Shown here: positions 7,315-58,850 of the stretch, in pieces
How positions within the stretch are numbered: the first letter of the stretch is position 1
Layout: every line of letters begins with the position of its first letter
IMG/VR virus record: IMGVR_UViG_3300032296_003307
Coordinates: 62,001 to 126,000 of that record
Strand: one strand, 5' to 3'
DNA length: 64,000 nucleotides
The notes under the pieces: generated by a model
What the model saw: the letters and a program-made list of their open reading frames with translations, nothing else
Database searches by the model: none
Told to the model about the DNA's origin: nothing
Position numbers and translations under genes: made by a program

Positions 7315-9171
7315 ATGTTAACAACAGAATCACAAATTTTGTCGGAAATTACTACCCATTTGAAATATGCTAAATTCGTACCCGAAAAGCATAGAAGGGA
7401 AACGTGGGATGAGTTGGTTACCCGAAACAAAGAAATGCACATCAAAAAGTTTCCCCAATTGGCTGAAGAGATTGAAGCCGCTTACAAGTACGTTTATGAC
7501 AAAAAGGTATTACCATCAATGCGTTCAATGCAATTTGCTGGTAAACCAATTGAAATAAACAATGCTCGTATTTTTAACTGTTCTTATTTACCAATTGATG
7601 ATTTTAGAGCATTTTCTGAAATCATGTTCTTATTACTTTCAGGTTGCGGAGTAGGTTATTCAGTACAAACACATCATGTAGAAAAGTTACCTGAAATTAG
7701 AAAACCACTTAAGTGGAAACGTTATTTAGTAGGTGATTCTATTGAAGGTTGGGCTGATGCAGTTCGTATGTTAACCAAAGCTTATTTTGGTCAAACATCA
7801 ACTGGTCCTTTATTTGATTTTAGAGACATTAGAGCAAAAGGTGCTTCATTAATTACAGTTGGAGGTAAAGCACCAGGTCCTGAACCATTGAAAATTGCTT
7901 TAATTCATATGCAAGCGATTTTAGACCATAAACAAGATGGTGAAAAATTAACTACTTTAGAATGTCACGATATTATTTGTCATTTGGCTGATGCTGTATT
8001 ATCAGGTGGTATTCGTAGAGCAGCTCTTATTGCTTTGTTCAATCTTCATGATGAAGATATGTTGACTTGTAAATTCGGTAACTGGTGGGAAAATAACCCT
8101 CAAAGAGGTAGAGCAAACAACTCAGCTGTATTACTTCGTAATATGATTGATAAAGAAACATTTATGAGTTTGTGGGGTAAAATTGAGGCATCTAATAGTG
8201 GAGAACCAGGTTTCTTATTTACAAATGATAAAGATGCTGGAACTAACCCTTGTGCCGAGATTAACTTAAAAGCTAATCAATTCTGTAACTTGTGTGAAAT
8301 CAATGCTTCAGATATTGAAACACAAGAGGAATATAATGCAAGAGCTAAAGCAGCAGCTTTCATTGGTACACTACAAGCTAGCTATACTGATTTCCATTAC
8401 TTGAGAGACATTTGGAGAAAAACAACCGAAAAAGAAGCATTGTTAGGTATTGGAATGACAGGTATTGCCTCAGGTGCTGTATTAAAACTTGATATGAAAC
8501 AAGCAGCTAAAGTAGCAGTATCAGAAAATGAAAGAGTAGCTGGTATTTTAGGTATCAATAAAGCAGCTCGTGTTACTACAGTTAAACCCTCAGGAACCAC
8601 TTCATTAGTATTAGGTACAAGTTCAGGTATTCACGCTTGGCACGATGATTACTATATGAGAAGAATTCGTTTAGGTAAAAATGAAGCTTTGTATACTTAT
8701 CTGAATGTTTACCATCCTGAAATGTTGGAAGATGATTTCTTTAAACCAAATCTTCAATCAATTGTTTCTGTTCCTCAACGTGCTCCAGAAGGTGCTATTA
8801 CACGTAAAGAATCAGCTATGGATTTGTTAGAACGTATTAAAACCATCAACAAAAACTGGATTAAACCAGGACATAGAAAAGGTGCTAACATGCATAACGT
8901 ATCAGCTACTGTTACTATCAAGCAAGATGAATGGCCTGCAGTTGGAGAATGGCTTTATGAAAATAAAGAATACTTTACAGCATTGTCTTTCTTACCATTT
9001 GACGGACACACCTATAAGCAAGCTCCTTTCGAAACTATAACAAAGGAAGAATTCGAAGCAGCAGTTAGTTCATTACATAAAGTAGATTTATCTTTAGTAA
9101 TTGAAATGAATGATAATACAGCATTAATGGAAAATCTTGCATGCTCTGGTGGGCAGTGTGAGATAGTTTAA
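7315..9171 (+). CDS. nrdJ: Class II (B12-dependent) ribonucleotide reductase
   Basis: VLPSMRS, FNCSY, TNPCAEI, VKPSGTTS, C-terminal ACSGGQCEIV; no beta subunit in the window. Confidence 0.85.
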   Translation: MLTTESQILSEITTHLKYAKFVPEKHRRETWDELVTRNKEMHIKKFPQLAEEIEAAYKYVYDKKVLPSMRSMQFAGKPIEINNARIFNCSYLPIDDFRAFSEIMFLLLSGCGVGYSVQTHHVEKLPEIRKPLKWKRYLVGDSIEGWADAVRMLTKAYFGQTSTGPLFDFRDIRAKGASLITVGGKAPGPEPLKIALIHMQAILDHKQDGEKLTTLECHDIICHLADAVLSGGIRRAALIALFNLHDEDMLTCKFGNWWENNPQRGRANNSAVLLRNMIDKETFMSLWGKIEASNSGEPGFLFTNDKDAGTNPCAEINLKANQFCNLCEINASDIETQEEYNARAKAAAFIGTLQASYTDFHYLRDIWRKTTEKEALLGIGMTGIASGAVLKLDMKQAAKVAVSENERVAGILGINKAARVTTVKPSGTTSLVLGTSSGIHAWHDDYYMRRIRLGKNEALYTYLNVYHPEMLEDDFFKPNLQSIVSVPQRAPEGAITRKESAMDLLERIKTINKNWIKPGHRKGANMHNVSATVTIKQDEWPAVGEWLYENKEYFTALSFLPFDGHTYKQAPFETITKEEFEAAVSSLHKVDLSLVIEMNDNTALMENLACSGGQCEIV

Positions 9172-9179
9172 TATTTATA
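9172..9179 (+). promoter_or_regulatory. Putative late promoter family TATTTATA, representative copy
   Basis: Sense-strand octamer shortly upstream of starts at 9172, 9247, 9808, 13726, 19500, 26515, 29837, 31574, 44375, 48142, 49468, 53103, 61200 and on the minus strand at 60581-60588; variants TATTTATT at 17427, 23540 and 54372, TATGTATA at about 46568. Confidence 0.8.
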
Positions 9180-9183
9180 CGGT

Positions 9184-9219
9184 ATGTGGAATAGTATAAA
9201 AGAAAGAATATTTTATTAA
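9184..9219 (+). pseudogene. First dead 5' stub (MWNSIKERIFY*) of the membrane-protein gene at 10403
   Basis: Shares AAAGAAAGAATATTT and IKERIF with the stub at 9622; has its own TATTTATA at 9172. Confidence 0.65.
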
Positions 9220-9601: not shown

Positions 9602-9621
9602 TACATTATTGATTATAAATT

Positions 9622-9768
9622 ATGTTTCAAAAAATTAAAGAAAGAATATTTCCTTTCCTGATAGCATTTTCTGCCTTATCAGTTAGTGCATCAGCTGCTT
9701 TTTATAGCGTTACTGGTCTCAGCATGTTATTTGCTGGGGCTAGTTTCGCTGTAATTATTATTTTCTAA
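9622..9768 (+). pseudogene. Second dead 5' stub (48 aa) of the membrane-protein gene at 10403
   Basis: FLIAFSALSVSASAAFYSVTGLSMLFAGASFAVIII aligns without gaps to WLITFCALGLGGTAAYYSVIGLSKMFAGVSTAVIIM of the 10403 ORF; ends in TAA just before the HNH leader. Confidence 0.85.
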
Positions 9769-13296: not shown

Positions 13297-13509
13297 ATGG
13301 AACAAATGTTATCACTTTTTGATTACCTAGGTTATGCTGCTGGTTCTAAATTAGGTAAAGATGTAGCAAAGGCCGCAGCAGCCGAAAAAGTTGGGTTCCA
13401 AACTAAAATAGTACAAAATCCAGCCTATTCAGGAGAAATAATGATGTATCCAAAATCATTTTTGGATAAATTTTTCAAAGGAGATGTTAACGACGATTTA
13501 CCCTTTTAA
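13297..13509 (+). CDS. Small protein ending in an SSB-like tail DDLPF
   Basis: C-terminus GDVNDDLPF. Confidence 0.65.
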   Translation: MEQMLSLFDYLGYAAGSKLGKDVAKAAAAEKVGFQTKIVQNPAYSGEIMMYPKSFLDKFFKGDVNDDLPF

Positions 13510-13511
13510 TT

Positions 13512-13673
13512 ATGAATACAAAATCACACCCTTCAAAACCAATGAAAGATATTAATTCGGCTTGGGAAGCAGAAATTAAAAAACAATTAGATGCCGTTTG
13601 GGAAAATCGTTTTCGCCTAAGCTTGAATAACCTAGAAACCTTACGTAAATTAGCTAATAAAACAAAAACATGA
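13512..13673 (+). CDS. Small hypothetical protein (53 aa)
   Basis: Translated by hand: MNTKSHPSKP...LANKTKT; stop overlaps the queC stub ATG. Confidence 0.5.
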   Translation: MNTKSHPSKPMKDINSAWEAEIKKQLDAVWENRFRLSLNNLETLRKLANKTKT

Positions 13674-13696
13674 ATAAACAAGCAGTATTGTTTTAA
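13670..13696 (+). pseudogene. Dead 5' stub of queC (MNKQAVLF*)
   Basis: AAACAAGCAGTA shared with the queC start (MNTNKKQAVLS) on the other side of the HNH gene. Confidence 0.7.
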
Positions 13697-13702
13697 AAGT
13701 TT

Positions 13703-13751
13703 ATGTTTTTTTATGGGGGTTATAATATTTATAACCGCCATAAAATTACAT
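13703..13751 (+). promoter_or_regulatory. 23-bp imperfect hairpin upstream of HNH containing the late promoter
   Basis: 13703-13725 pairs with 13729-13751 with 3 mismatches; TATTTATA at 13726-13733 spans loop and 3' arm; ATG at 13756. Confidence 0.75.
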
Positions 13752-13755
13752 TAAT

Positions 13756-14415
13756 ATGCCTAGTAAAGAATATATGAAAGAGTATAGGAGAAATAAAAAT
13801 CCTAAACTCAAAGAAAAAGAAGAACTTGCACAACAAGAAAAAAAACGTTGTACAAAATGTTTAGAAATAAAACCTTTTAATTCTTTCACCCCCCAAAAAG
13901 CAGGATTTATGGGATTAAAATCTCAATGTAAGGAGTGTGATTGTTTATATGATAAACATTTTCAATCTAAAACTAACTTTAGATCAGAACGAGATAAAAC
14001 AGATAAAGCTAAACAATATAGAAAAAATTATGTAGCTGAAAACTTAGACTGGTGGAGAAAATATGAAAGAGAATATAGATATAATCGTAGAAGAGAAGAT
14101 ATGTTTTTTAAAATAAAAGGAAACCTATCAGGACGACTATCTGATTTAATAAATAAAAGAAATTTATCTACTAATACTTTTGAACTTATAGGATGTGATA
14201 GAGAAACTTTTTTACAATATATTGAAAAACAATTTGTAGAAGGAATGACATGGGAAAATTATGGTTTAAAAGGATGGCATATAGATCACATAATTCCTTT
14301 ATCTTCTTTTGATTTAACTAACGAAGATGAAGTAAAGAAAGCATGTTATTATACTAATTTACAACCTCTTTGGTGGGAAGATAATTTAAAAAAAGGAAGT
14401 AAACTTGGAAATTAG
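13756..14415 (+). CDS. HNH homing endonuclease
   Basis: CTKC...CKEC zinc ribbon; WHIDHIIPLSSF...NLQPLWWEDNLKK. Confidence 0.88.
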   Translation: MPSKEYMKEYRRNKNPKLKEKEELAQQEKKRCTKCLEIKPFNSFTPQKAGFMGLKSQCKECDCLYDKHFQSKTNFRSERDKTDKAKQYRKNYVAENLDWWRKYEREYRYNRRREDMFFKIKGNLSGRLSDLINKRNLSTNTFELIGCDRETFLQYIEKQFVEGMTWENYGLKGWHIDHIIPLSSFDLTNEDEVKKACYYTNLQPLWWEDNLKKGSKLGN

Positions 14416-14439
14416 AAAAAGATTTATTATATTAATATT

Positions 14440-15318
14440 ATGAACACAAATAAAAAACAAGCAGTACTTAGCCTCTCAGGAGGATTAGATTCAAGTACTT
14501 TATTATTACATTTGTTAGCTAATGGGTATGAGGTTTGTGCCCTTTCTTTTGATTACGGACAAAAACACTCAGTTGAACTTGAACGTGCTAAAGAATTAGT
14601 AAATTATCTTAACCAAGAACAAGATTATCAATTGTCCTATATTGAATCTAAATTTAGCAAAATTAAATATCAAGTAATTAAACTTGATGGTTTATCTCAA
14701 TTACTTAATTCAGCACTTGTAACTGGTGGAGCAGAAGTTCCTGAAGGACACTATGCTGAAGAAAATATGAAAGCAACAGTTGTTCCTAATCGTAATAAAA
14801 TCTTTAGTTCAATTATTCAATCCGTTGCTTTATCAATTGCTAATGAAACTAAAGAAGAAGTTAAAATTGCTTTAGGGGTACACAGCGGTGATCATAGTAT
14901 TTACCCAGATTGTACTGAAGATTGGAGATCAGCAGATGAACATGCTTTTAAGGTAGGTAACTGGGATTCACATTTGGTAAATTATTATACTCCATATATG
15001 GAAGGAAACAAATTTACTATTTTACAAGATGGAGAAAAATGTTGTGAACAACTAGGTCTTGATTTTGATGCAGTATACAAACGTACTAATACATCTTACA
15101 AACCAATCAAACATGTAATTTTTTATGATGATGAAACCTCAAGTGAAGAATGGTTTTCTGATTACAAATCAGCATCTTCAGTAGAGCGAGTAGAGGCATT
15201 TATAAAATTAGGTAGAAAAGATGCTGTATCTTATGCTGACGAATTCGGACCAGTAACTTGGGAATTTGTAAAAGAGTACGTATCTTCCGTGTTAGATGAG
15301 TATCAGAAGACAATATAA
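14440..15318 (+). CDS. queC: 7-cyano-7-deazaguanine (preQ0) synthase
   Basis: SLSGGLDS PP-loop, FDYGQKH, VVPNRN, YPDC. Confidence 0.92.
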   Translation: MNTNKKQAVLSLSGGLDSSTLLLHLLANGYEVCALSFDYGQKHSVELERAKELVNYLNQEQDYQLSYIESKFSKIKYQVIKLDGLSQLLNSALVTGGAEVPEGHYAEENMKATVVPNRNKIFSSIIQSVALSIANETKEEVKIALGVHSGDHSIYPDCTEDWRSADEHAFKVGNWDSHLVNYYTPYMEGNKFTILQDGEKCCEQLGLDFDAVYKRTNTSYKPIKHVIFYDDETSSEEWFSDYKSASSVERVEAFIKLGRKDAVSYADEFGPVTWEFVKEYVSSVLDEYQKTI

Positions 15319-53939: not shown

Positions 53940-54362
53940 ATGAAAGTAGAATATAAAAATCGTTACAATGATGTTTTTACATTTAGTAAAACAGAAGATG
54001 GAAACATCTTATGGGAAGGTAATTTTGAGTATAGCAGAAGAGGTTGGCCAAATGTTTACACTGAGGCTTATAACCAGTATGTTTTAGATGGTGGTGATAT
54101 GGATCTTAAACAGTTTAAAAAAGAGGTTCACGAGGCTGTTTATGATGAAAATGGAAAATATTTACATATGAGTGAAACAAGCCAAAAGTATTGTAAATTA
54201 GTTTATTCAGATTTAAATACAATTGATTTTGCGGATCCATCAGGTGGTCCATATATATCTTCAAATATGGATATGGGAAGATTTGATGAGGAATTTAAAG
54301 GAATGATTGTTGAAAAATTTGAACGAGTAGAAACAGGATATAAAATAATAATTAAAAAATAA
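53940..54362 (+). CDS. Hypothetical protein
   Basis: After the promoter/hairpin at 53891. Confidence 0.6.
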   Translation: MKVEYKNRYNDVFTFSKTEDGNILWEGNFEYSRRGWPNVYTEAYNQYVLDGGDMDLKQFKKEVHEAVYDENGKYLHMSETSQKYCKLVYSDLNTIDFADPSGGPYISSNMDMGRFDEEFKGMIVEKFERVETGYKIIIKK

Positions 54363-54368
54363 TTTTTG

Positions 54369-54480
54369 CAATATTTATTACCGAATGCCGAGTCGCAGCG
54401 GTAATAGTATTGAAAATAAACCAAAATACCCAAGCATGAGTAGGGAACTGCGACCCCGAAAGTGCTTGGGTTTTTTATTT
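54369..54480 (+). ncRNA. Candidate structured leader RNA: two stem-loops with a 7-bp kissing interaction, followed by a U-tract
   Basis: P1 TATTACCG/CGGTAATA; P2 CCCAAGCA/TGCTTGGG with inner GGG/CCC; loop GTCGCAG (54392-54398) is complementary to loop CTGCGAC (54448-54454); GC-rich island in AT-rich DNA. Confidence 0.7.
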
Positions 54481-54481
54481 T

Positions 54482-55123
54482 ATGAAAAAATGTACAAAAT
54501 GTAAAGAAGAAAAACAATTAACTGAGTTTAATAAAGCTAAAAATCAAAGAAATGGATTAAGTCCATGGTGTAAAGAATGTATTAATCAAAATGGTAAAGA
54601 TTGGTATCTCAAAAATAAAGAAAAACACATGGTGTATGTTCTTGAATATAGAAAAAAATGGGATAAAGAAAATAAAGAACATATTAAGAGTTATGGGAAA
54701 GAATATAGGCAAAATAATAAAGACAAAATTAGACAAAGAGAAAAACTATATAGAGAAAAAAACAACCATGTCTCCAGATGGAGAGATATTCTTAAAAGTA
54801 CTTTAAAAAGATTTCATAGAGGAAAAACAGCCTCAACCCAAACTTTATTAGGTTATTCAGCCCAAGAATTAAAAGAACATTTAGATAAATTAGGAATGAA
54901 TTGGGATACTGATCATATTGATCATATAATACCTTTGAGTTGGTTTAAGAAAAGCACCCCCATTCATGTTGTAAATGACTTAAGAAATCTTCAACCATTA
55001 TTTTCAGAAGAAAATCTAAAAAAGCATAATAAGTTTGGAGATTTAAAAGATATTTCGTATATTAATGATGTAAAAAAATATATAAAAAAAGATAAATTAA
55101 AGTTATGTTTACCTATCATTTAA
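54482..55123 (+). CDS. HNH homing endonuclease, same family as 13756
   Basis: CTKC...CKEC; DHIDHIIPLSWF...NLQPLFSEENLKK. Confidence 0.85.
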   Translation: MKKCTKCKEEKQLTEFNKAKNQRNGLSPWCKECINQNGKDWYLKNKEKHMVYVLEYRKKWDKENKEHIKSYGKEYRQNNKDKIRQREKLYREKNNHVSRWRDILKSTLKRFHRGKTASTQTLLGYSAQELKEHLDKLGMNWDTDHIDHIIPLSWFKKSTPIHVVNDLRNLQPLFSEENLKKHNKFGDLKDISYINDVKKYIKKDKLKLCLPII

Positions 55124-55461
55124 GCGAAACTGAATATTTGGTTTTTAAAACCTACAACAATCATTTTGAGCTATTTTCAGGACACGAAGGTGGTGCTGAG
55201 TTAAAGAAAATTGCTAACTATCAAGGTGGTAAATGGTTTTTTGATTCATATGATCAACAAAAGTTGTTTTGGTTTTTATTTAATTTGTTTAAAATGGATT
55301 TTGGAAAAGCATTAAAAAAGTTTTCTAGATCATTGAATGAAAAACCTAAAACATATGTTTTTACTTGTGCTAAACGTAGGTTTGATATTAAAGTACAAAA
55401 GATGAAACGTGGTTGGAGTAATTTGTTTTACGGATTTTATGAAGGGAATAGACGTGGCTAA
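55105..55461 (+). CDS. Hypothetical protein
   Basis: AAGTTATG start context. Confidence 0.55.
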   Translation: MFTYHLSETEYLVFKTYNNHFELFSGHEGGAELKKIANYQGGKWFFDSYDQQKLFWFLFNLFKMDFGKALKKFSRSLNEKPKTYVFTCAKRRFDIKVQKMKRGWSNLFYGFYEGNRRG

Positions 55462-55702
55462 ACCTATTTTTATTATCAGATTTCCTTATGTTAAAGAACA
55501 ACATATAGTAGATAAGTACTTAAAAATGTATAAGGAACTTGGTGAGCAAATGACTGATTATCACGTACTATGTCCTATGGACAATAGTGTTGAAAGAGTT
55601 GAATTTGAATGTTACAATGCTATCAATGCAACCGATGTTGAAATTGAAGAATTGAAGCAAATAATACTTGAAAAAATTAAAACAATAGAAAGTTATGAAT
55701 AA
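55409..55702 (+). CDS. Hypothetical protein, cassette array
   Basis: Ends KTIESYE within a junction repeat; true start probably a downstream GTG. Confidence 0.5.
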   Translation: MVGVICFTDFMKGIDVAKPIFIIRFPYVKEQHIVDKYLKMYKELGEQMTDYHVLCPMDNSVERVEFECYNAINATDVEIEELKQIILEKIKTIESYE

Positions 55703-56081
55703 AGAACAACAAGAATTATTGGATGATGTCTATAAAAATTGGTTTGAAAAAGGTAGAACTGAATTTGAAGAGTTTGCTGATCCTATGTTTATGAGTGAAG
55801 ATGCTTTAGGGGAGGAAAAATTTCATAAAATTTCTAAAGAATGGTTTATTGAACAAATCAAAACCGATACAGAGTTCTCTGAAAAGTGGGGATTAAAGAT
55901 TGAAGAACGAGAGTTGTTTAGATTAGAACGAATAAATATTGCTATTGAGAAAAAATTAACTCATAAAACTGCACACTTAACAAAAGACTTTGATTATCAG
56001 AAATGGTGCGATGAACATAATATCCCAACCAAACTAATTACAGTAACATACAACAATAAAACAATAGAAAGTTATGAATAA
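55695..56081 (+). CDS. Hypothetical protein, cassette array
   Basis: Starts MNKE and ends KTIESYE, both inside junction repeats. Confidence 0.65.
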   Translation: MNKEQQELLDDVYKNWFEKGRTEFEEFADPMFMSEDALGEEKFHKISKEWFIEQIKTDTEFSEKWGLKIEERELFRLERINIAIEKKLTHKTAHLTKDFDYQKWCDEHNIPTKLITVTYNNKTIESYE

Positions 56082-56232
56082 AGAAACTATAGTAATATCT
56101 ATTAACTTTACGGTTAAAGAATTCAACGAACATTATTGTATATTACAATATGATGATGAGAGAACTTTAAAATTATATTCCTTTGATAAGGAATACAAAA
56201 CAATTAAAGAATATTATGAACAATATAGATAA
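56074..56232 (+). CDS. Small hypothetical protein (52 aa), cassette array
   Basis: Translated by hand, starts MNKETIVI. Confidence 0.5.
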   Translation: MNKETIVISINFTVKEFNEHYCILQYDDERTLKLYSFDKEYKTIKEYYEQYR

Positions 56233-56431
56233 ACTAATAGAACAAGGAGCTGAATTAGCACGTAAACATGAAGAACTACGTGATGAAATTCTAAATAATC
56301 CTGATATGCCACAGGAGTTAAAAGATATTATCAATAAAAGTAGAATACCTGATGATAAGATAGTTGATTTAACTAGTGGTAAAAAAATAAAATATATTAA
56401 TCCTGATACATTTGAAATTGAATATGAATAA
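56216..56431 (+). CDS. Small hypothetical protein starting MNNIDK
   Basis: First 6 codons mimic the thyA start. Confidence 0.55.
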   Translation: MNNIDKLIEQGAELARKHEELRDEILNNPDMPQELKDIINKSRIPDDKIVDLTSGKKIKYINPDTFEIEYE

Positions 56432-56645
56432 TCTAGACAAAAAATACATTATTGATGGTATTACTATCGATAAAACAAAAGAGGGGTATAGAGTTTTTAC
56501 AATACCAACCCAACATTTTGATATTGTTAATTTAGATGAACTAACTAACGATAGATTTGATTTGGAAATTAAAAGACAGGAACAATATAAAAAAGATAGT
56601 TCCGAATTAATTAACTTATGGTTAAATGAAAATGAACAACATTGA
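56424..56645 (+). CDS. Small hypothetical protein starting MNNLDKKY
   Basis: First 8 codons mimic the thyA start. Confidence 0.55.
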   Translation: MNNLDKKYIIDGITIDKTKEGYRVFTIPTQHFDIVNLDELTNDRFDLEIKRQEQYKKDSSELINLWLNENEQH

Positions 56646-56709
56646 TAAACAATACCAACAACTACTCAAAGACATTATTGAGTATGGTGTAGAAAAACAA
56701 GACAATTGA
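56632..56709 (+). pseudogene. Dead 5' stub of thyA (MNNIDKQYQQLLKDIIEYGVEKQDN*)
   Basis: Near-identical to 56863-56938: 2 substitutions and one 3-nt indel. Confidence 0.9.
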
Positions 56710-56714
56710 AAGTT

Positions 56715-56873
56715 ATGAATAAAGAAAGAAGAATAATTAAAGTACCTATACCAAAAGAAATTTGGGATGCTGACATGTCAATATGGAATGTACTCTTTGG
56801 AAGAAGATATATTATGAGAGCTTGGATGAATAGTATAAAAGATGTAATTAACCAAATGAGTGATGAACAATAA
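56715..56873 (+). CDS. Small hypothetical protein (52 aa) between the two thyA starts
   Basis: Translated by hand, starts MNKERRII within the junction repeat. Confidence 0.55.
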   Translation: MNKERRIIKVPIPKEIWDADMSIWNVLFGRRYIMRAWMNSIKDVINQMSDEQ

Positions 56874-58014
56874 CATTGACAAACAATACCAGCAACTACT
56901 CAAAGACATTATTGAGTATGGTGTAGAAAAACAAGACAGGACAGGAACTGGAACTAAAAGTATATTTGGTTATACCATCCGTCATAATATGAGAGATGGT
57001 TTTCCTCTTTTAACAACTAAAAAACTTCATTGGCCTTCTATAGTAAGTGAGCTTTTATGGTTTCTGCAAGGCAGAACTGACTTGAGATGGTTATTGGAAC
57101 AAGGGAATACGATTTGGGTTGGTGATTGTTATGAGAACTATTTGAATGTAGTTATGTATGAAAAACCTGATTATCTTCATGAAAAACACGGGCATCTTAA
57201 AATGAGTGTGAAAAAAGAAGATGATAATTATTTACCACTTACACAGGAGGAATTTATTAACAGAATTAAAACTGATGATAAATTTAGACATTGGGGTGAA
57301 TTAGGTCCAATTTATGGTAAACAATGGAGGGATTGGGGTGGTAGAAAGACAGATGGGTTTATTGAGTTTGAAAGTAATGGATATAGTGACCATATTAAAG
57401 GTAAAGACCAAATCCAAAATCTAATCAACGACCTTAAAACAAATCCAGACTCAAGACGATTAATGGTTAATGCTTGGAATGTTGGTGAATTAGACCAAAT
57501 GGTTCTTCCACCTTGTCATTATGGATTTCAAGTTTATACAAGAGAGCTAAGTTTAAAAGAGAGAAGACTGTTAGTTACACAAGAAATGTTCAACCAAATT
57601 TACAATGGTGGAGGTCCAGAAAGCTTATCTCATAAAGAAATAGATAAGTGGAACGTACCAACTAGAGCAATCTCTTTAATGTGGAATCAACGTTCAGTAG
57701 ATGTAGGTTTAGGTCTCCCATTCAACATAGCATCTTACGGACTATTACTTGAAATTATTGCCAAAATTACAAATATGGTTCCTGATGAATTGATTGGAAA
57801 CTTGGGTGATACACACCTTTATTTAAACCACATTGAACCAATTAAGGAACAATTAACAAGAGAACCATTTGAATTACCTAAATTGGTTCATATGAAAACA
57901 GATGAGTTTTGGAAAGAATTTAACATAAGTTTAATTGGACATTTGGACCCTAAAGATTTCACATTAGAAAACTATCAATCACACCCAACAATTAAATTAC
58001 CATTAAGTAACTAA
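56863..58014 (+). CDS. thyA: Thymidylate synthase
   Basis: DRTGTGT, FPLLTTKK, ELLWFL, LGPIYGKQWR, LPPCHY, QRSVD, GLPFNIASY, HLYLNH. Confidence 0.96.
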   Translation: MNNNIDKQYQQLLKDIIEYGVEKQDRTGTGTKSIFGYTIRHNMRDGFPLLTTKKLHWPSIVSELLWFLQGRTDLRWLLEQGNTIWVGDCYENYLNVVMYEKPDYLHEKHGHLKMSVKKEDDNYLPLTQEEFINRIKTDDKFRHWGELGPIYGKQWRDWGGRKTDGFIEFESNGYSDHIKGKDQIQNLINDLKTNPDSRRLMVNAWNVGELDQMVLPPCHYGFQVYTRELSLKERRLLVTQEMFNQIYNGGGPESLSHKEIDKWNVPTRAISLMWNQRSVDVGLGLPFNIASYGLLLEIIAKITNMVPDELIGNLGDTHLYLNHIEPIKEQLTREPFELPKLVHMKTDEFWKEFNISLIGHLDPKDFTLENYQSHPTIKLPLSN

Positions 58015-58850
58015 TGTCTTACATCTATAATATATTCAAAAAATATAAGTGTTCACTTTTAATGATATATCTTTTTGTGTTCATAGCACAAATTGAATAT
58101 CTTATTGAACCCTATGTTTTGGGTAAAATGATAGATGGACTATTGATTGGTGAGTACTATTGGTTAATGATATTTTTTATTACATCCATGGTTGCAAATG
58201 TTTTTATGTATAAAAGAATGGTTTTGGATACAAAAATATACACAACAATTTATAATGATATTGTTTTTGAATATCTTAAAAATGATAAAACATCCGAACC
58301 ATCAGCCAAAATAGCAAGGACAGAAATGGCTAACAATATAATTAACTTCTTAGAAAACGATTTACAGTATTACATTATGGCAATTATGTCCTTGATTGGT
58401 ACGTTATTTTTTGTATTTTTACAGGACTATATTACAGGATTTGTGGTTGCGTTGTGTTTGATTCCTGTATTATACATTATTAAGAAACTTTACAAAAAAA
58501 TCGCACAAGGAACTAAAGTGGCATTTAACCAATACGAAAAGAAGATAGGTACCATGAACGAAGGTAATGATAAAAATATTAACAGTTTTTTTGAAAGAAG
58601 AAGAAAAATCTTTATTCACCTATCAACCCTACAAGGTAAAAATTGGTTCTCACTTAATTCAGTTAAAACCTTGTTTTTAGTTATCGCTTTAGTTGTATTT
58701 ACAAGTAGACACACTAATATATCTCAAGGACAAGCCGTAACAATATACACATACATAAATCAGTTTTTAATATCATTAATGTCAATACCAATTGGAGTTG
58801 AAACATTTACTAGAATTAAAGATGTGATACACAGAATAAAAACAACATAA
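58014..58850 (+). CDS. Stand-alone ABC-transporter-type transmembrane domain protein
   Basis: About 5-6 hydrophobic helices, PYVLGKMIDGLL; no ATPase domain. Confidence 0.55.
   Translation: MSYIYNIFKKYKCSLLMIYLFVFIAQIEYLIEPYVLGKMIDGLLIGEYYWLMIFFITSMVANVFMYKRMVLDTKIYTTIYNDIVFEYLKNDKTSEPSAKIARTEMANNIINFLENDLQYYIMAIMSLIGTLFFVFLQDYITGFVVALCLIPVLYIIKKLYKKIAQGTKVAFNQYEKKIGTMNEGNDKNINSFFERRRKIFIHLSTLQGKNWFSLNSVKTLFLVIALVVFTSRHTNISQGQAVTIYTYINQFLISLMSIPIGVETFTRIKDVIHRIKTT

What the first reader, a model, noticed from the sequence alone, without database searches (positions are those of the whole stretch)
55409..56938. Gene-accretion hotspot at the thyA start: integrase-free cassette array with two junction motifs
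Seen: seven tiny ORFs stacked before thyA. Three start inside a 25-28 bp repeat (MNKE...), and two upstream ORFs therefore both end KTIESYE. Three others start with thyA-like codons (MNNIDK, MNNLDKKY, and a 25-aa near-exact dead thyA stub). The stub runs straight into the junction repeat. Inference: repeated recombination using translation-start regions as the homology unit, so each new gene arrives with a working start and thyA is regenerated downstream. This is the clearest snapshot of the 5'-replacement process seen at 9184, 9622 and 13670.
Basis: partly seen in the sequence, partly recalled or inferred. Interest (0 to 1): 0.72.

Follow-up and report, generated by a model that had tools for sequence, protein, structure and literature searches.

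The report
Recombination-built gene island upstream of phage thyA
In an uncultured 269-kb lake phage, the stretch just before the thymidylate synthase gene is a real, fast-changing island of small genes, stitched together by recombination at a short conserved gene-to-gene joint that belongs to a large, unannotated family of thyA-derived mini-genes.

Summary
There are three copies of a 22-29 nt joint, called J here (ending ..KTIESYE-stop and overlapping an ATG that starts MNKE). There is a 70-nt, 96% identical copy of the thyA 5' end that runs straight into J. Two further ORFs start like thyA.

An independent assembly is 100% identical across the array, so it is not an assembly artefact.

J is not a generic cassette site. 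It is the conserved tail-to-head joint of a large phage gene family typified by ORF 55695-56081, with about 4,300 protein clusters and no Pfam or PHROG entry. This family is usually arrayed upstream of thyA. It equals the two phage-specific insert segments of ThyA without the catalytic core (hhalign 99.1%).

In relatives, J links unrelated genes, and thyA 5' stubs of 6-34 codons recur. GIY-YIG homing endonuclease genes sit between stub and thyA. A 90%-identical relative has different genes between the family gene and thyA.

In one relative, a family copy and thyA share a 117-nt identical tract, which indicates gene conversion.

Best reading: short-homology recombination at J and at the thyA start, anchored by thyA and probably triggered by homing endonucleases.

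This is a new variant of known modular shuffling, such as the PeSL cassettes of T4-type phages.

The parts
54482..55123 (+). Free-standing HNH / endonuclease VII-like gene, a candidate homing endonuclease
   Evidence: PHROG 1035 E 4e-22; weak Pfam HNH hit. The segment 54369-55079 is missing from the 90%-identical relative L155. A 71% homolog lies 1 kb downstream of thyA in L059. A 37% paralog lies at window 13843-14457.
55105..55461 (+). ORF of 118 aa, function unknown; left conserved flank of the island
   Evidence: Orthologs in L155, L040 and L059; dN/dS 0.10-0.17.
55409..55702 (+). ORF of 97 aa (GTG start; ATG at 55439) whose last residues, TIESYE, are borrowed from the joint
   Evidence: The L155 ortholog ends KIKTDE and lacks 9 nt of J. 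The paralog in the own genome at 153.5 kb has no such tail.
55678..55706 (+). J copy 1: stop of the upstream ORF overlapping the ATG of 55695
55695..56081 (+). Member of the thyA-derived mini-gene family (MNKEQQELL...NKTIESYE, 128 aa)
   Evidence: 4,309 relatives at E <= 0.001, with no Pfam or PHROG entry. hhalign to phage ThyA gives 99.1%, E 7e-19, covering ThyA 86-145 and 223-282. Bases 55724-55891 are 86% identical to the thyA of L019. dN/dS 0.14.
56057..56085 (+). J copy 2
56074..56232 (+). ORF of 52 aa; carries the family start MNKE, but its body is unrelated to the family
   Evidence: Partial 60% homolog in L119.
56216..56431 (+). ORF of 71 aa with a thyA-like first six codons (MNNIDK)
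   Evidence: Homologs abut thyA directly in L006 and L087, and lie in another order in L109. dN/dS 0.02-0.17.
56424..56645 (+). ORF of 73 aa whose first 9 codons (MNNLDKKYI) equal the start of a thyA allele seen as a stub in L054. A further thyA-like patch lies at 56442-56455.
   Evidence: A contig of run X4 joins 56437 to 56887, which reads as an uninterrupted thyA start right after ORF 56216.
56632..56709 (+). Dead thyA 5' stub: 25 codons, then a stop
   Evidence: 96% identical to 56869-56938. The same stub is present in the independent assembly L159.
56697..56726 (+). J copy 3, fused to the end of the stub
   Evidence: The last 15 nt of the stub match a family 3' end at 12 of 15 positions when read against the L054 975 junction.
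56715..56873 (+). ORF of 52 aa (MNKERR...). Its stop overlaps the thyA start.
   Evidence: 92% nt homolog in L109, also behind a thyA stub plus J. Two copies in L006. dN/dS 0.12-0.38. No depth (0-0.9) in runs X2-X4, which hold its neighbours.
56863..58014 (+). Intact thyA (383 aa), with two phage-specific inserts at about 57118-57297 and 57529-57708
   Evidence: Pfam PF00303 E 3e-91; PPCH catalytic motif present. The gene is mosaic: it is identical to L159 up to about 57546 and then 14-59% divergent. Compared with L155, the insert 1 region is not alignable.

Best explanation
This is a hypervariable island of small genes directly 5' of thyA in an uncultured 268.7-kb lake-water phage. The nearest cultured relatives by thyA are Flavobacterium phages.

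The island grows and reshuffles by recombination between short, nucleotide-conserved gene-boundary modules. There are two such modules.

1. Module J is the tail-to-head joint (..NKTIESYE stop, overlapping ATG AAT AAA GAA) of a large family of mini-genes. These genes are derived from thyA: they consist of its two lineage-specific insert segments without the catalytic core. They normally stand in tandem upstream of thyA.
2. The second module is the thyA start itself. It shares TATGAAYAA and an A-rich patch with J.

thyA, which is conserved between phages, supplies the right-hand homologous crossover. The left-hand crossover falls in J or at a short homology inside the first 6-34 codons of the resident thyA.

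Each such event adds or swaps a gene, gives it a ready-made start (MNKE or MNN[IL]DK), leaves a thyA 5' relic, and restores a full thyA downstream.

In this window the order of events was probably as follows. ORF 56216 once abutted thyA. Then the body of ORF 56424 was inserted. Then J plus ORF 56715 was inserted at codon 25.

Shown: the repeats, the family, the homology to ThyA, the variability between relatives, the recurrence of stubs, and the mosaic thyA.

Inferred: the crossover mechanism. It could be unequal or microhomology-mediated exchange, or integration of a small circle, carried out by the phage's own recombination machinery. Also inferred is that double-strand breaks made by free-standing homing endonucleases around thyA are a frequent trigger.
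For: J is the family's own termini. Of 80 distinct family members in the fetched loci, 48 start MNKE and 57 end IESYE. The exact 22-mer occurs in 59 IMG/VR stretches, up to 5 per locus, and thyA lies within the fetched locus in 27 of them.

J is portable. Of 134 non-redundant joints, 22 link family to family, 40 family to other, 36 other to family and 36 other to other. Many upstream frames are only 6-14 codon relics. 62 of 98 ORFs starting ATGAATAAAGAA have the exact upstream 10-mer, against 24 of 4,124 other starts.

J spreads onto foreign genes. The TIESYE tail of ORF 55409 is absent from its L155 ortholog and from its paralog in the own genome.

The island varies. L155 matches both flanks at about 90% but has a different interior and no HNH gene. 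Synonymous divergence (dS) to L109 is 0.13 for ORF 56715 and 0.90 for ORF 56216.

Stubs recur: 25 codons here, 28 in L109 (followed by J and the 56715 homolog, but with a different breakpoint and a stub only roughly two-thirds identical to ours by eye, not computed), 26 in the L054 type, 34 in L076, 19 in L111, 13 in L115, and 6 in L109.

Homing endonuclease link. GIY-YIG/SegE-like genes lie between stub and thyA in the L054 type and in L111, directly upstream of thyA in L100, inside thyA in L129, and downstream in L117, L125 and L139. All 3 thyA alleles with such a gene directly upstream carry the minority TRNG variant at codons 25-29 (11 of 70 overall), while the stubs carry the majority DRTGTG type.

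thyA is a crossover site: L159 is identical up to about 57546 and divergent beyond.

The genome encodes a RecA/UvsX-like protein and no tyrosine integrase.
Against: No homing endonuclease gene lies between the stub and thyA in this window, and both stub and resident thyA are of the majority allele type. The endonuclease trigger therefore rests on relatives only.

Stub lengths vary from 6 to 34 codons, so no single cleavage or crossover site is defined.

The array is fixed, at 100% identity, in the closest relative found, so no ongoing turnover was seen.

Conservation of J could partly reflect selection on a translation signal or on the family's protein termini rather than recombination.

No recombination intermediate, such as a circle or a read-level variant, was observed. 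The read tool gave only assembled unitigs.
Confidence: 0.7

Rival explanations
1. J is kept by selection as a functional signal, for example for translational coupling or initiation at the overlapping stop and start, or as a phage promoter. Its recurrence would then be convergence or retention rather than a footprint of recombination.
For: The upstream half of J is kept in front of MNKE genes even where the upstream frame is only a 6-codon relic. The association is tight: 62 of 98. All genes in the array overlap stop to start.
Against: Only three copies exist in a 268.7-kb genome with about 377 genes, so J is not a general signal. The L155 ortholog of 55695 lacks 9 nt of the upstream half. The upstream half encodes the family's conserved C-terminus. 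No promoter-like enrichment was found. This rival does not explain the thyA stubs or the differing dS of neighbouring genes.
Confidence: 0.15
2. The array arose by local tandem duplication of one ancestral gene followed by divergence. Only the conserved ends would remain recognisable, and no exchange between phages is needed.
For: Tandem arrays of true family members exist in relatives, for example three in a row in L142 and up to eight hits in L110. One real family member sits in this array.
Against: The bodies of 56074, 56216, 56424 and 56715 show no similarity to the family HMM. They have their own homologs, 60-96% identical, in phages whose thyA is only 50-54% identical to ours. Neighbouring genes differ seven-fold in dS to the same relative. 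The thyA stub cannot come from duplication of a family gene.
Confidence: 0.08
3. A site-specific system moves the cassettes: either an integron-like recombinase, or an endonuclease with a precise target at J or at thyA codon 25.
For: Two phages, ours and L109, carry the order stub, J, 56715 homolog. Stubs in several phages end near codons 25-28.
Against: No tyrosine integrase is present. No inverted repeat or hairpin lies at J. The breakpoints differ between ours and L109 by 13 nt, and range over 6-34 codons overall.
Confidence: 0.05
4. The duplicated thyA start is an assembly chimera of two co-occurring strains.
For: The 46-nt exact repeat breaks the unitigs of run X1 at 56636 and 56675.
Against: An independent assembly from another sample has the identical structure. 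The unitig 56675-56922 carries 30 nt of stub joined to J3. L109, the L054 type, L076, L111 and L115 show analogous stubs.
Confidence: 0.02

Closest known systems
PeSL cassettes (promoter-early stem-loops) of T4-type phages (Arbiol et al. 2010, PMC2839356; Comeau et al. 2014, PMC4122927)
   Same: Short conserved motifs flank small, mostly unknown genes in hyperplastic regions. Recombination between motif copies explains insertions, deletions and replacements between close relatives. The genes are exchanged between phages.
   Different: J is not a promoter plus terminator in an intergenic space. It is a coding stop/start overlap belonging to a gene family, so cassette genes inherit 4 N-terminal and/or 5-7 C-terminal codons. 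The right boundary is the start of a conserved enzyme gene, which leaves coding stubs. Mini-circles were not looked for here.
Free-standing homing endonucleases of T-even phages: intronless homing, co-conversion and genes in pieces (review PMC2988022)
   Same: GIY-YIG and HNH genes sit beside or inside a conserved nucleotide-metabolism gene. Close relatives differ in their presence. Flanks are mosaic. In L129, thyA is split in two by an endonuclease gene, as nrdA is in phage Aeh1.
   Different: In this window the HNH gene lies 1.7 kb from thyA, and no endonuclease gene lies at the stub. Classical homing copies the donor precisely and is not known for leaving nested 5' stubs with accreted genes. 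Cleavage was not tested.
Integron gene cassettes
   Same: A one-directional stack of small, promoterless, unrelated genes next to a fixed anchor.
   Different: There is no integrase and no attC-type hairpin. The joint is 22-29 nt of plain homology, and the breakpoints are not precise.
Silent-cassette gene conversion loci (Neisseria pilE/pilS, Borrelia vlsE); named from general knowledge, not tested
   Same: Arrays of partial paralogs stand upstream of a full-length gene. A perfect conversion tract, 117 nt identical, joins a cassette and thyA insert 2 within one contig (L054).
   Different: The cassettes here are complete ORFs under purifying selection, not silent fragments. The target is an enzyme's accessory module. 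No such tract is seen in this window's own genome.

Membership tests
PeSL-type mobile regulatory cassette | The motif consists of a sigma-70-like early promoter followed by a terminator stem-loop in an intergenic space. | tested here: not met
   J lies in a stop/start overlap. There are no inverted repeats at J. Promoter-like sites are not enriched: 39 found against 35.9 expected. No terminator-like site lies at J.
PeSL-type mobile regulatory cassette | Insertions, deletions and replacements between close relatives are bounded by motif copies. | tested here: met
   Between L155 and the window, 90% identity ends at J copy 2 (56085) and resumes at the thyA start.
PeSL-type mobile regulatory cassette | Small circles are formed by exchange between neighbouring motifs. 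| not testable with these tools
   Only assembled unitigs were available.
Integron | A tyrosine recombinase (IntI) lies next to the array. | tested here: not met
   PF00589 has no match in the whole 268.7-kb genome. Serine recombinases were not searched.
Integron | attC-type imperfect inverted repeats lie at cassette ends. | tested here: not met
   No inverted repeat lies at or around J.
Free-standing homing endonuclease locus (intronless homing) | An endonuclease gene of a known homing family lies beside a conserved target gene and is present or absent among relatives. | tested here: met
   HNH at 54482-55123 is absent from L155. GIY-YIG genes are adjacent to thyA in the L054 type, L100, L111 and L129.
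Free-standing homing endonuclease locus (intronless homing) | The enzyme cleaves the endonuclease-less allele near the insertion site, and the linked allele is resistant. | not testable with these tools
   Only indirect evidence: 3 of 3 alleles with an upstream GIY-YIG carry the TRNG variant, while the stubs carry DRTGTG.
Thymidylate synthase (PF00303), for ORF 56863-58014 | Full-length match to the family profile, with the catalytic Cys motif. | tested here: met
   E 2.8e-91 over profile positions 1-264 of 266; PPCH present. Model pLDDT 83.6.
Thymidylate synthase (PF00303), for ORF 55695-56081 | Catalytic core present. | tested here: not met
   No Pfam hit. hhalign shows homology only to ThyA 86-145 and 223-282, and the core 146-222 is missing. 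It is a derivative of thyA, not an enzyme of the family.
Group I intron in thyA (T4 td type) | A structured intron RNA lies between two exon parts. | tested here: not met
   No Rfam intron match in 54000-58500 at E <= 1. The resident thyA has its own complete 5' end.

The most novel reading that the evidence does not exclude
The arrays of thyA-derived mini-genes upstream of thyA may be more than a dumping ground. They may form a cassette reservoir that exchanges sequence with the two hypervariable surface inserts of the phage thymidylate synthase by gene conversion, while also being expressed as free-standing copies of that accessory module (for example as decoys or partners). The J-flanked slots would double as an integrase-free exchange platform for small accessory genes across many freshwater phages.

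Support: a 117-nt perfect tract between a family copy and thyA insert 2 within one contig; 141 family-to-thyA nucleotide matches confined to the insert regions; and breakpoints at the insert borders between near-identical phages.
Probability: 0.25. Interest if true: 0.8.

Novelty: new variant of a known kind. Interest (0 to 1): 0.62.

Why it matters
How phages acquire and shuffle their many small genes of unknown function is still argued mostly from examples in T4-like and lambdoid phages.

This locus gives a clean, datable series in an unrelated group of uncultured freshwater phages. An essential-type enzyme gene serves as the fixed anchor. A coding joint serves as the portable homology. Nested 5' stubs record successive insertions.

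It also uncovers a large, unannotated protein family of about 4,300 clusters that corresponds to the accessory inserts of phage ThyA. These inserts trade sequence with the family genes.

Together these make three questions testable:
- whether homing endonucleases drive gene gain, not only gene conversion;
- what the ThyA inserts and their free-standing copies do;
- whether the small cassette genes are accessory functions such as counter-defence.

Tried and rejected
Complex prediction of ThyA with the 55695 protein gave no verdict (score 0.01). It counts neither for nor against binding.

Fold searches with the family model (pLDDT 80.6) against PDB and AlphaFold clusters gave nothing below E 0.09, so no function could be assigned by fold.

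Pfam and PHROG gave nothing usable for 55105, 55409, 55695, 56074, 56216, 56424 or 56715.

tblastn of 55695 against 50,697 cultured phage records found no match, so no cultured model with the family was identified.

The Rfam scan found no intron or other RNA family. The promoter and terminator scan found nothing associated with J.

Laying reads gave only Logan unitigs, so read-level copy-number or junction variants could not be counted.

A first automatic survey of stubs was polluted by two loci (L044, L072) where an upstream ORF runs in frame into thyA. Those hits were set aside by hand.

Considered and dropped: that ours and L109 share one ancestral stub-J event. The breakpoints differ by 13 nt, and the stubs look only about two-thirds identical by eye (not computed) while the adjacent gene is 92% identical. 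However, a shared event followed by a deletion and conversion of the stub by the resident thyA cannot be excluded.
Full report
WHAT IS THERE

The window is bases 62001-126000 of a 268,739-bp IMG/VR phage record rated complete. GC is 32%, with about 377 genes, mostly on one strand. The nearest cultured sequences by thyA are Flavobacterium phages of the immuto group, at about 70% nt. The phage is found in lake-water metagenomes.

Between 54482 and 58014, all on the + strand and nearly all overlapping stop to start, lie:
- an HNH/endonuclease VII-like gene, 54482-55123;
- ORFs 55105-55461, 55409-55702, 55695-56081, 56074-56232, 56216-56431 and 56424-56645;
- a 25-codon thyA stub, 56632-56709;
- ORF 56715-56873;
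- thyA, 56863-58014.

The 22-mer ATAGAAAGTTATGAATAAAGAA, called J here, occurs three times in the window with 0, 0 and 1 mismatches, against 0.01 expected. It occurs nowhere else in the genome.

Bases 56635-56704 are 96% identical to the thyA 5' end at 56869-56938, and they run straight into J copy 3. Starts of the form MN[NK]+[IL]D occur in the genome only at 56216, 56424 and thyA.

An independent ENA assembly (L159) is 100% identical from 55860 to about 57540. A unitig of run X1 carries the joint between the stub end and J3. The structure is therefore real DNA, not an assembly chimera.

The small ORFs evolve as genes, with dN/dS of 0.02-0.38.

WHAT THE JUNCTION REPEAT IS

ORF 55695-56081 belongs to a very large family: 4,309 protein clusters at E <= 0.001, all hypothetical, with no Pfam or PHROG entry. 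No member was found in cultured phage records.

In the loci fetched here there are 80 distinct members. 48 start MNKE and 57 end IESYE. They often stand in tandem upstream of thyA, for example in L098, L110 and L142. J is therefore the tail-to-head joint of this family. The exact 22-mer occurs in 59 IMG/VR stretches, up to five per locus.

THE FAMILY IS DERIVED FROM thyA

A profile-profile comparison of the family with 70 phage ThyA sequences gives probability 99.1% and E 7e-19. The family aligns to ThyA residues 86-145 and 223-282, and the catalytic core 146-222 is cleanly missing.

These two segments are the lineage-specific inserts that make these ThyA proteins about 115 residues longer than the Pfam model. 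They include the canonical strand that precedes QRS, so the direction of descent is from ThyA to the family (inference).

Secondary-structure elements of the two AlphaFold models match one to one in order.

Family genes and thyA inserts still trade sequence:
- Bases 55724-55891 are 86% identical to the thyA of L019.
- There are 141 family-to-thyA nucleotide matches of 60 nt or more, and they fall in the insert regions.
- Within the single contig L054, a family copy and thyA share 117 identical bases covering insert 2, while the rest is barely alignable. This is a fresh gene-conversion tract.

J IS PORTABLE

Among 134 non-redundant joints:
- 22 link two family genes;
- 40 link a family gene to an unrelated gene;
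- 36 link an unrelated gene to a family gene;
- 36 link two unrelated genes.
The upstream frame is often just a 6-14 codon relic such as KIESYE or MNNIDKTIESYE.

62 of 98 ORFs that begin ATGAATAAAGAA carry the exact upstream 10-mer, against 24 of 4,124 other starts.

In this window, the TIESYE tail of ORF 55409 is not ancestral. The L155 ortholog lacks 9 nt of it, and the paralog in the own genome has no such tail.

THE ISLAND VARIES BETWEEN RELATIVES

L155 matches 55080-56085 at 90% and the first 280 nt of thyA at 89%. However, it lacks the HNH gene, and between the 55695 ortholog and thyA it has two different genes. One of these is again flanked by J on both sides.

Homologs of 56216 and 56715 occur in L006, L087, L109 and L113 in other orders and copy numbers, next to thyA genes only 50-60% identical to ours. 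Synonymous divergence from L109 is 0.13 for ORF 56715 and 0.90 for ORF 56216, so neighbouring genes have different histories.

In L006 and L087 (and, by my reading of one contig in run X4), the 56216 homolog abuts thyA directly. This suggests that in our phage two later insertions were made behind it, each preceded by a relic of the thyA start.

STUBS AND HOMING ENDONUCLEASES

thyA 5' relics upstream of an intact thyA recur:
- L109: 28 codons, then J and the 56715 homolog, at a breakpoint 13 nt from ours. L109 also has a 6-codon relic.
- L054, L055, L071: 26 codons.
- L076: 34 codons.
- L111: 19 codons.
- L115: 13 codons.

In the L054 type and in L111, a GIY-YIG/SegE-like homing endonuclease gene fills the space between stub and thyA. 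In L100 such a gene abuts thyA. In L129 it splits thyA inside insert 1 into 106-aa and 323-aa pieces. In L117, L125 and L139 it lies downstream.

All three thyA alleles with such a gene directly upstream carry the minority TRNG variant at codons 25-29, which is found in 11 of 70 alleles. The stubs beside them carry the majority DRTGTG type. This pattern is expected if the enzyme cuts the majority allele near there.

Established knowledge of T-even phages says that such enzymes drive repair by recombination, with co-conversion of flanks, and that they can split genes (PMC2988022).

thyA itself is a crossover site. L159 is identical to ours up to about 57546, at the start of insert 2, and is 14-59% divergent beyond, with different downstream genes.

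MECHANISM PROPOSED

thyA gives the right-hand homology. The upstream regions of different phages share little except J and the thyA start, so the left-hand join is made there or at a chance patch of similarity. The last 15 nt of our stub match a family 3' end at 12 of 15 positions.

A single unequal exchange would give exactly stub-J-gene-thyA. So would integration of a small circle carrying J, a gene and the first 25 codons of thyA. The circle route is known for PeSL cassettes (PMC2839356).

The genome has a RecA/UvsX-like gene and no tyrosine integrase.

The endonuclease trigger is an inference from relatives. In this window no endonuclease gene lies at the stub.

WHAT IT IS NOT

- It is not an intron.
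- It is not an integron.
- It is not a PeSL in the strict sense.
- It is not simple duplication and divergence of one gene.

VERDICT

The junction motif is reinterpreted as the joint of a thyA-derived gene family, and homing endonucleases are added as the probable driver.

It is a new variant of known modular shuffling. An unexpected by-product is a large, undescribed family that equals the accessory inserts of phage ThyA and exchanges sequence with them.

Noticed in passing
L129:6449-8488: thyA is in two pieces. A 106-aa N-terminal ORF is followed by a 240-aa GIY-YIG endonuclease gene, then a 323-aa C-terminal ORF that starts inside insert 1. This resembles the split nrdA of phage Aeh1.
   Followed up: partly
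L054:826-950 and L054:3755-3879: A family gene 2.5 kb upstream of thyA and thyA insert 2 share 122 of 125 bases, 117 of them in an unbroken run. This is a recent gene-conversion tract within one contig.
   Followed up: yes
window 57118-57297 and 57529-57708: The two ThyA insert segments are where near relatives and lake populations differ most. The insert 1 region is not alignable with L155. L159 diverges from about 57546. Many contigs in runs X1-X4 skip 57329-57405 and 57546-57665, while the thyA core between them is extremely deep.
   Followed up: partly
window 9168-9213 and 9606-9651: A 46-nt direct repeat (72% identity) covers two ORF starts that share ..IKERIF. No repeat was found around 13400-13800.
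   Followed up: partly
window 13843-14457 (genome 75843-76457): A second HNH endonuclease paralog, 37% identical to the one at 54482. The search reported one TAG inside a 524-aa read-through frame there.
   Followed up: no
genome G000:C1:20566-21396 (outside the window): Two GIY-YIG matches, one with a TAA inside the matched frame. These are possible further homing endonuclease genes, one perhaps broken.
   Followed up: no
window 58014-58850: The gene downstream of thyA is a 278-aa membrane protein with an ABC_membrane_3 match. It is conserved next to thyA in L019, L104, L114 and L115, but is replaced by unrelated genes in the otherwise identical L159.
   Followed up: partly
L044:5857-7047 and L072:5923-7038: An upstream small ORF runs in frame into thyA. 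In L044 it starts at a J-like joint. This gives an N-terminally extended ThyA, either a fusion or a lost stop.
   Followed up: no
L001:4004-5272 (Flavobacterium phage immuto thyA): Insert 1 of this cultured phage's thyA is 86% nt identical over 137 nt to a family gene of L113. No free-standing family gene was found in cultured phage records.
   Followed up: partly
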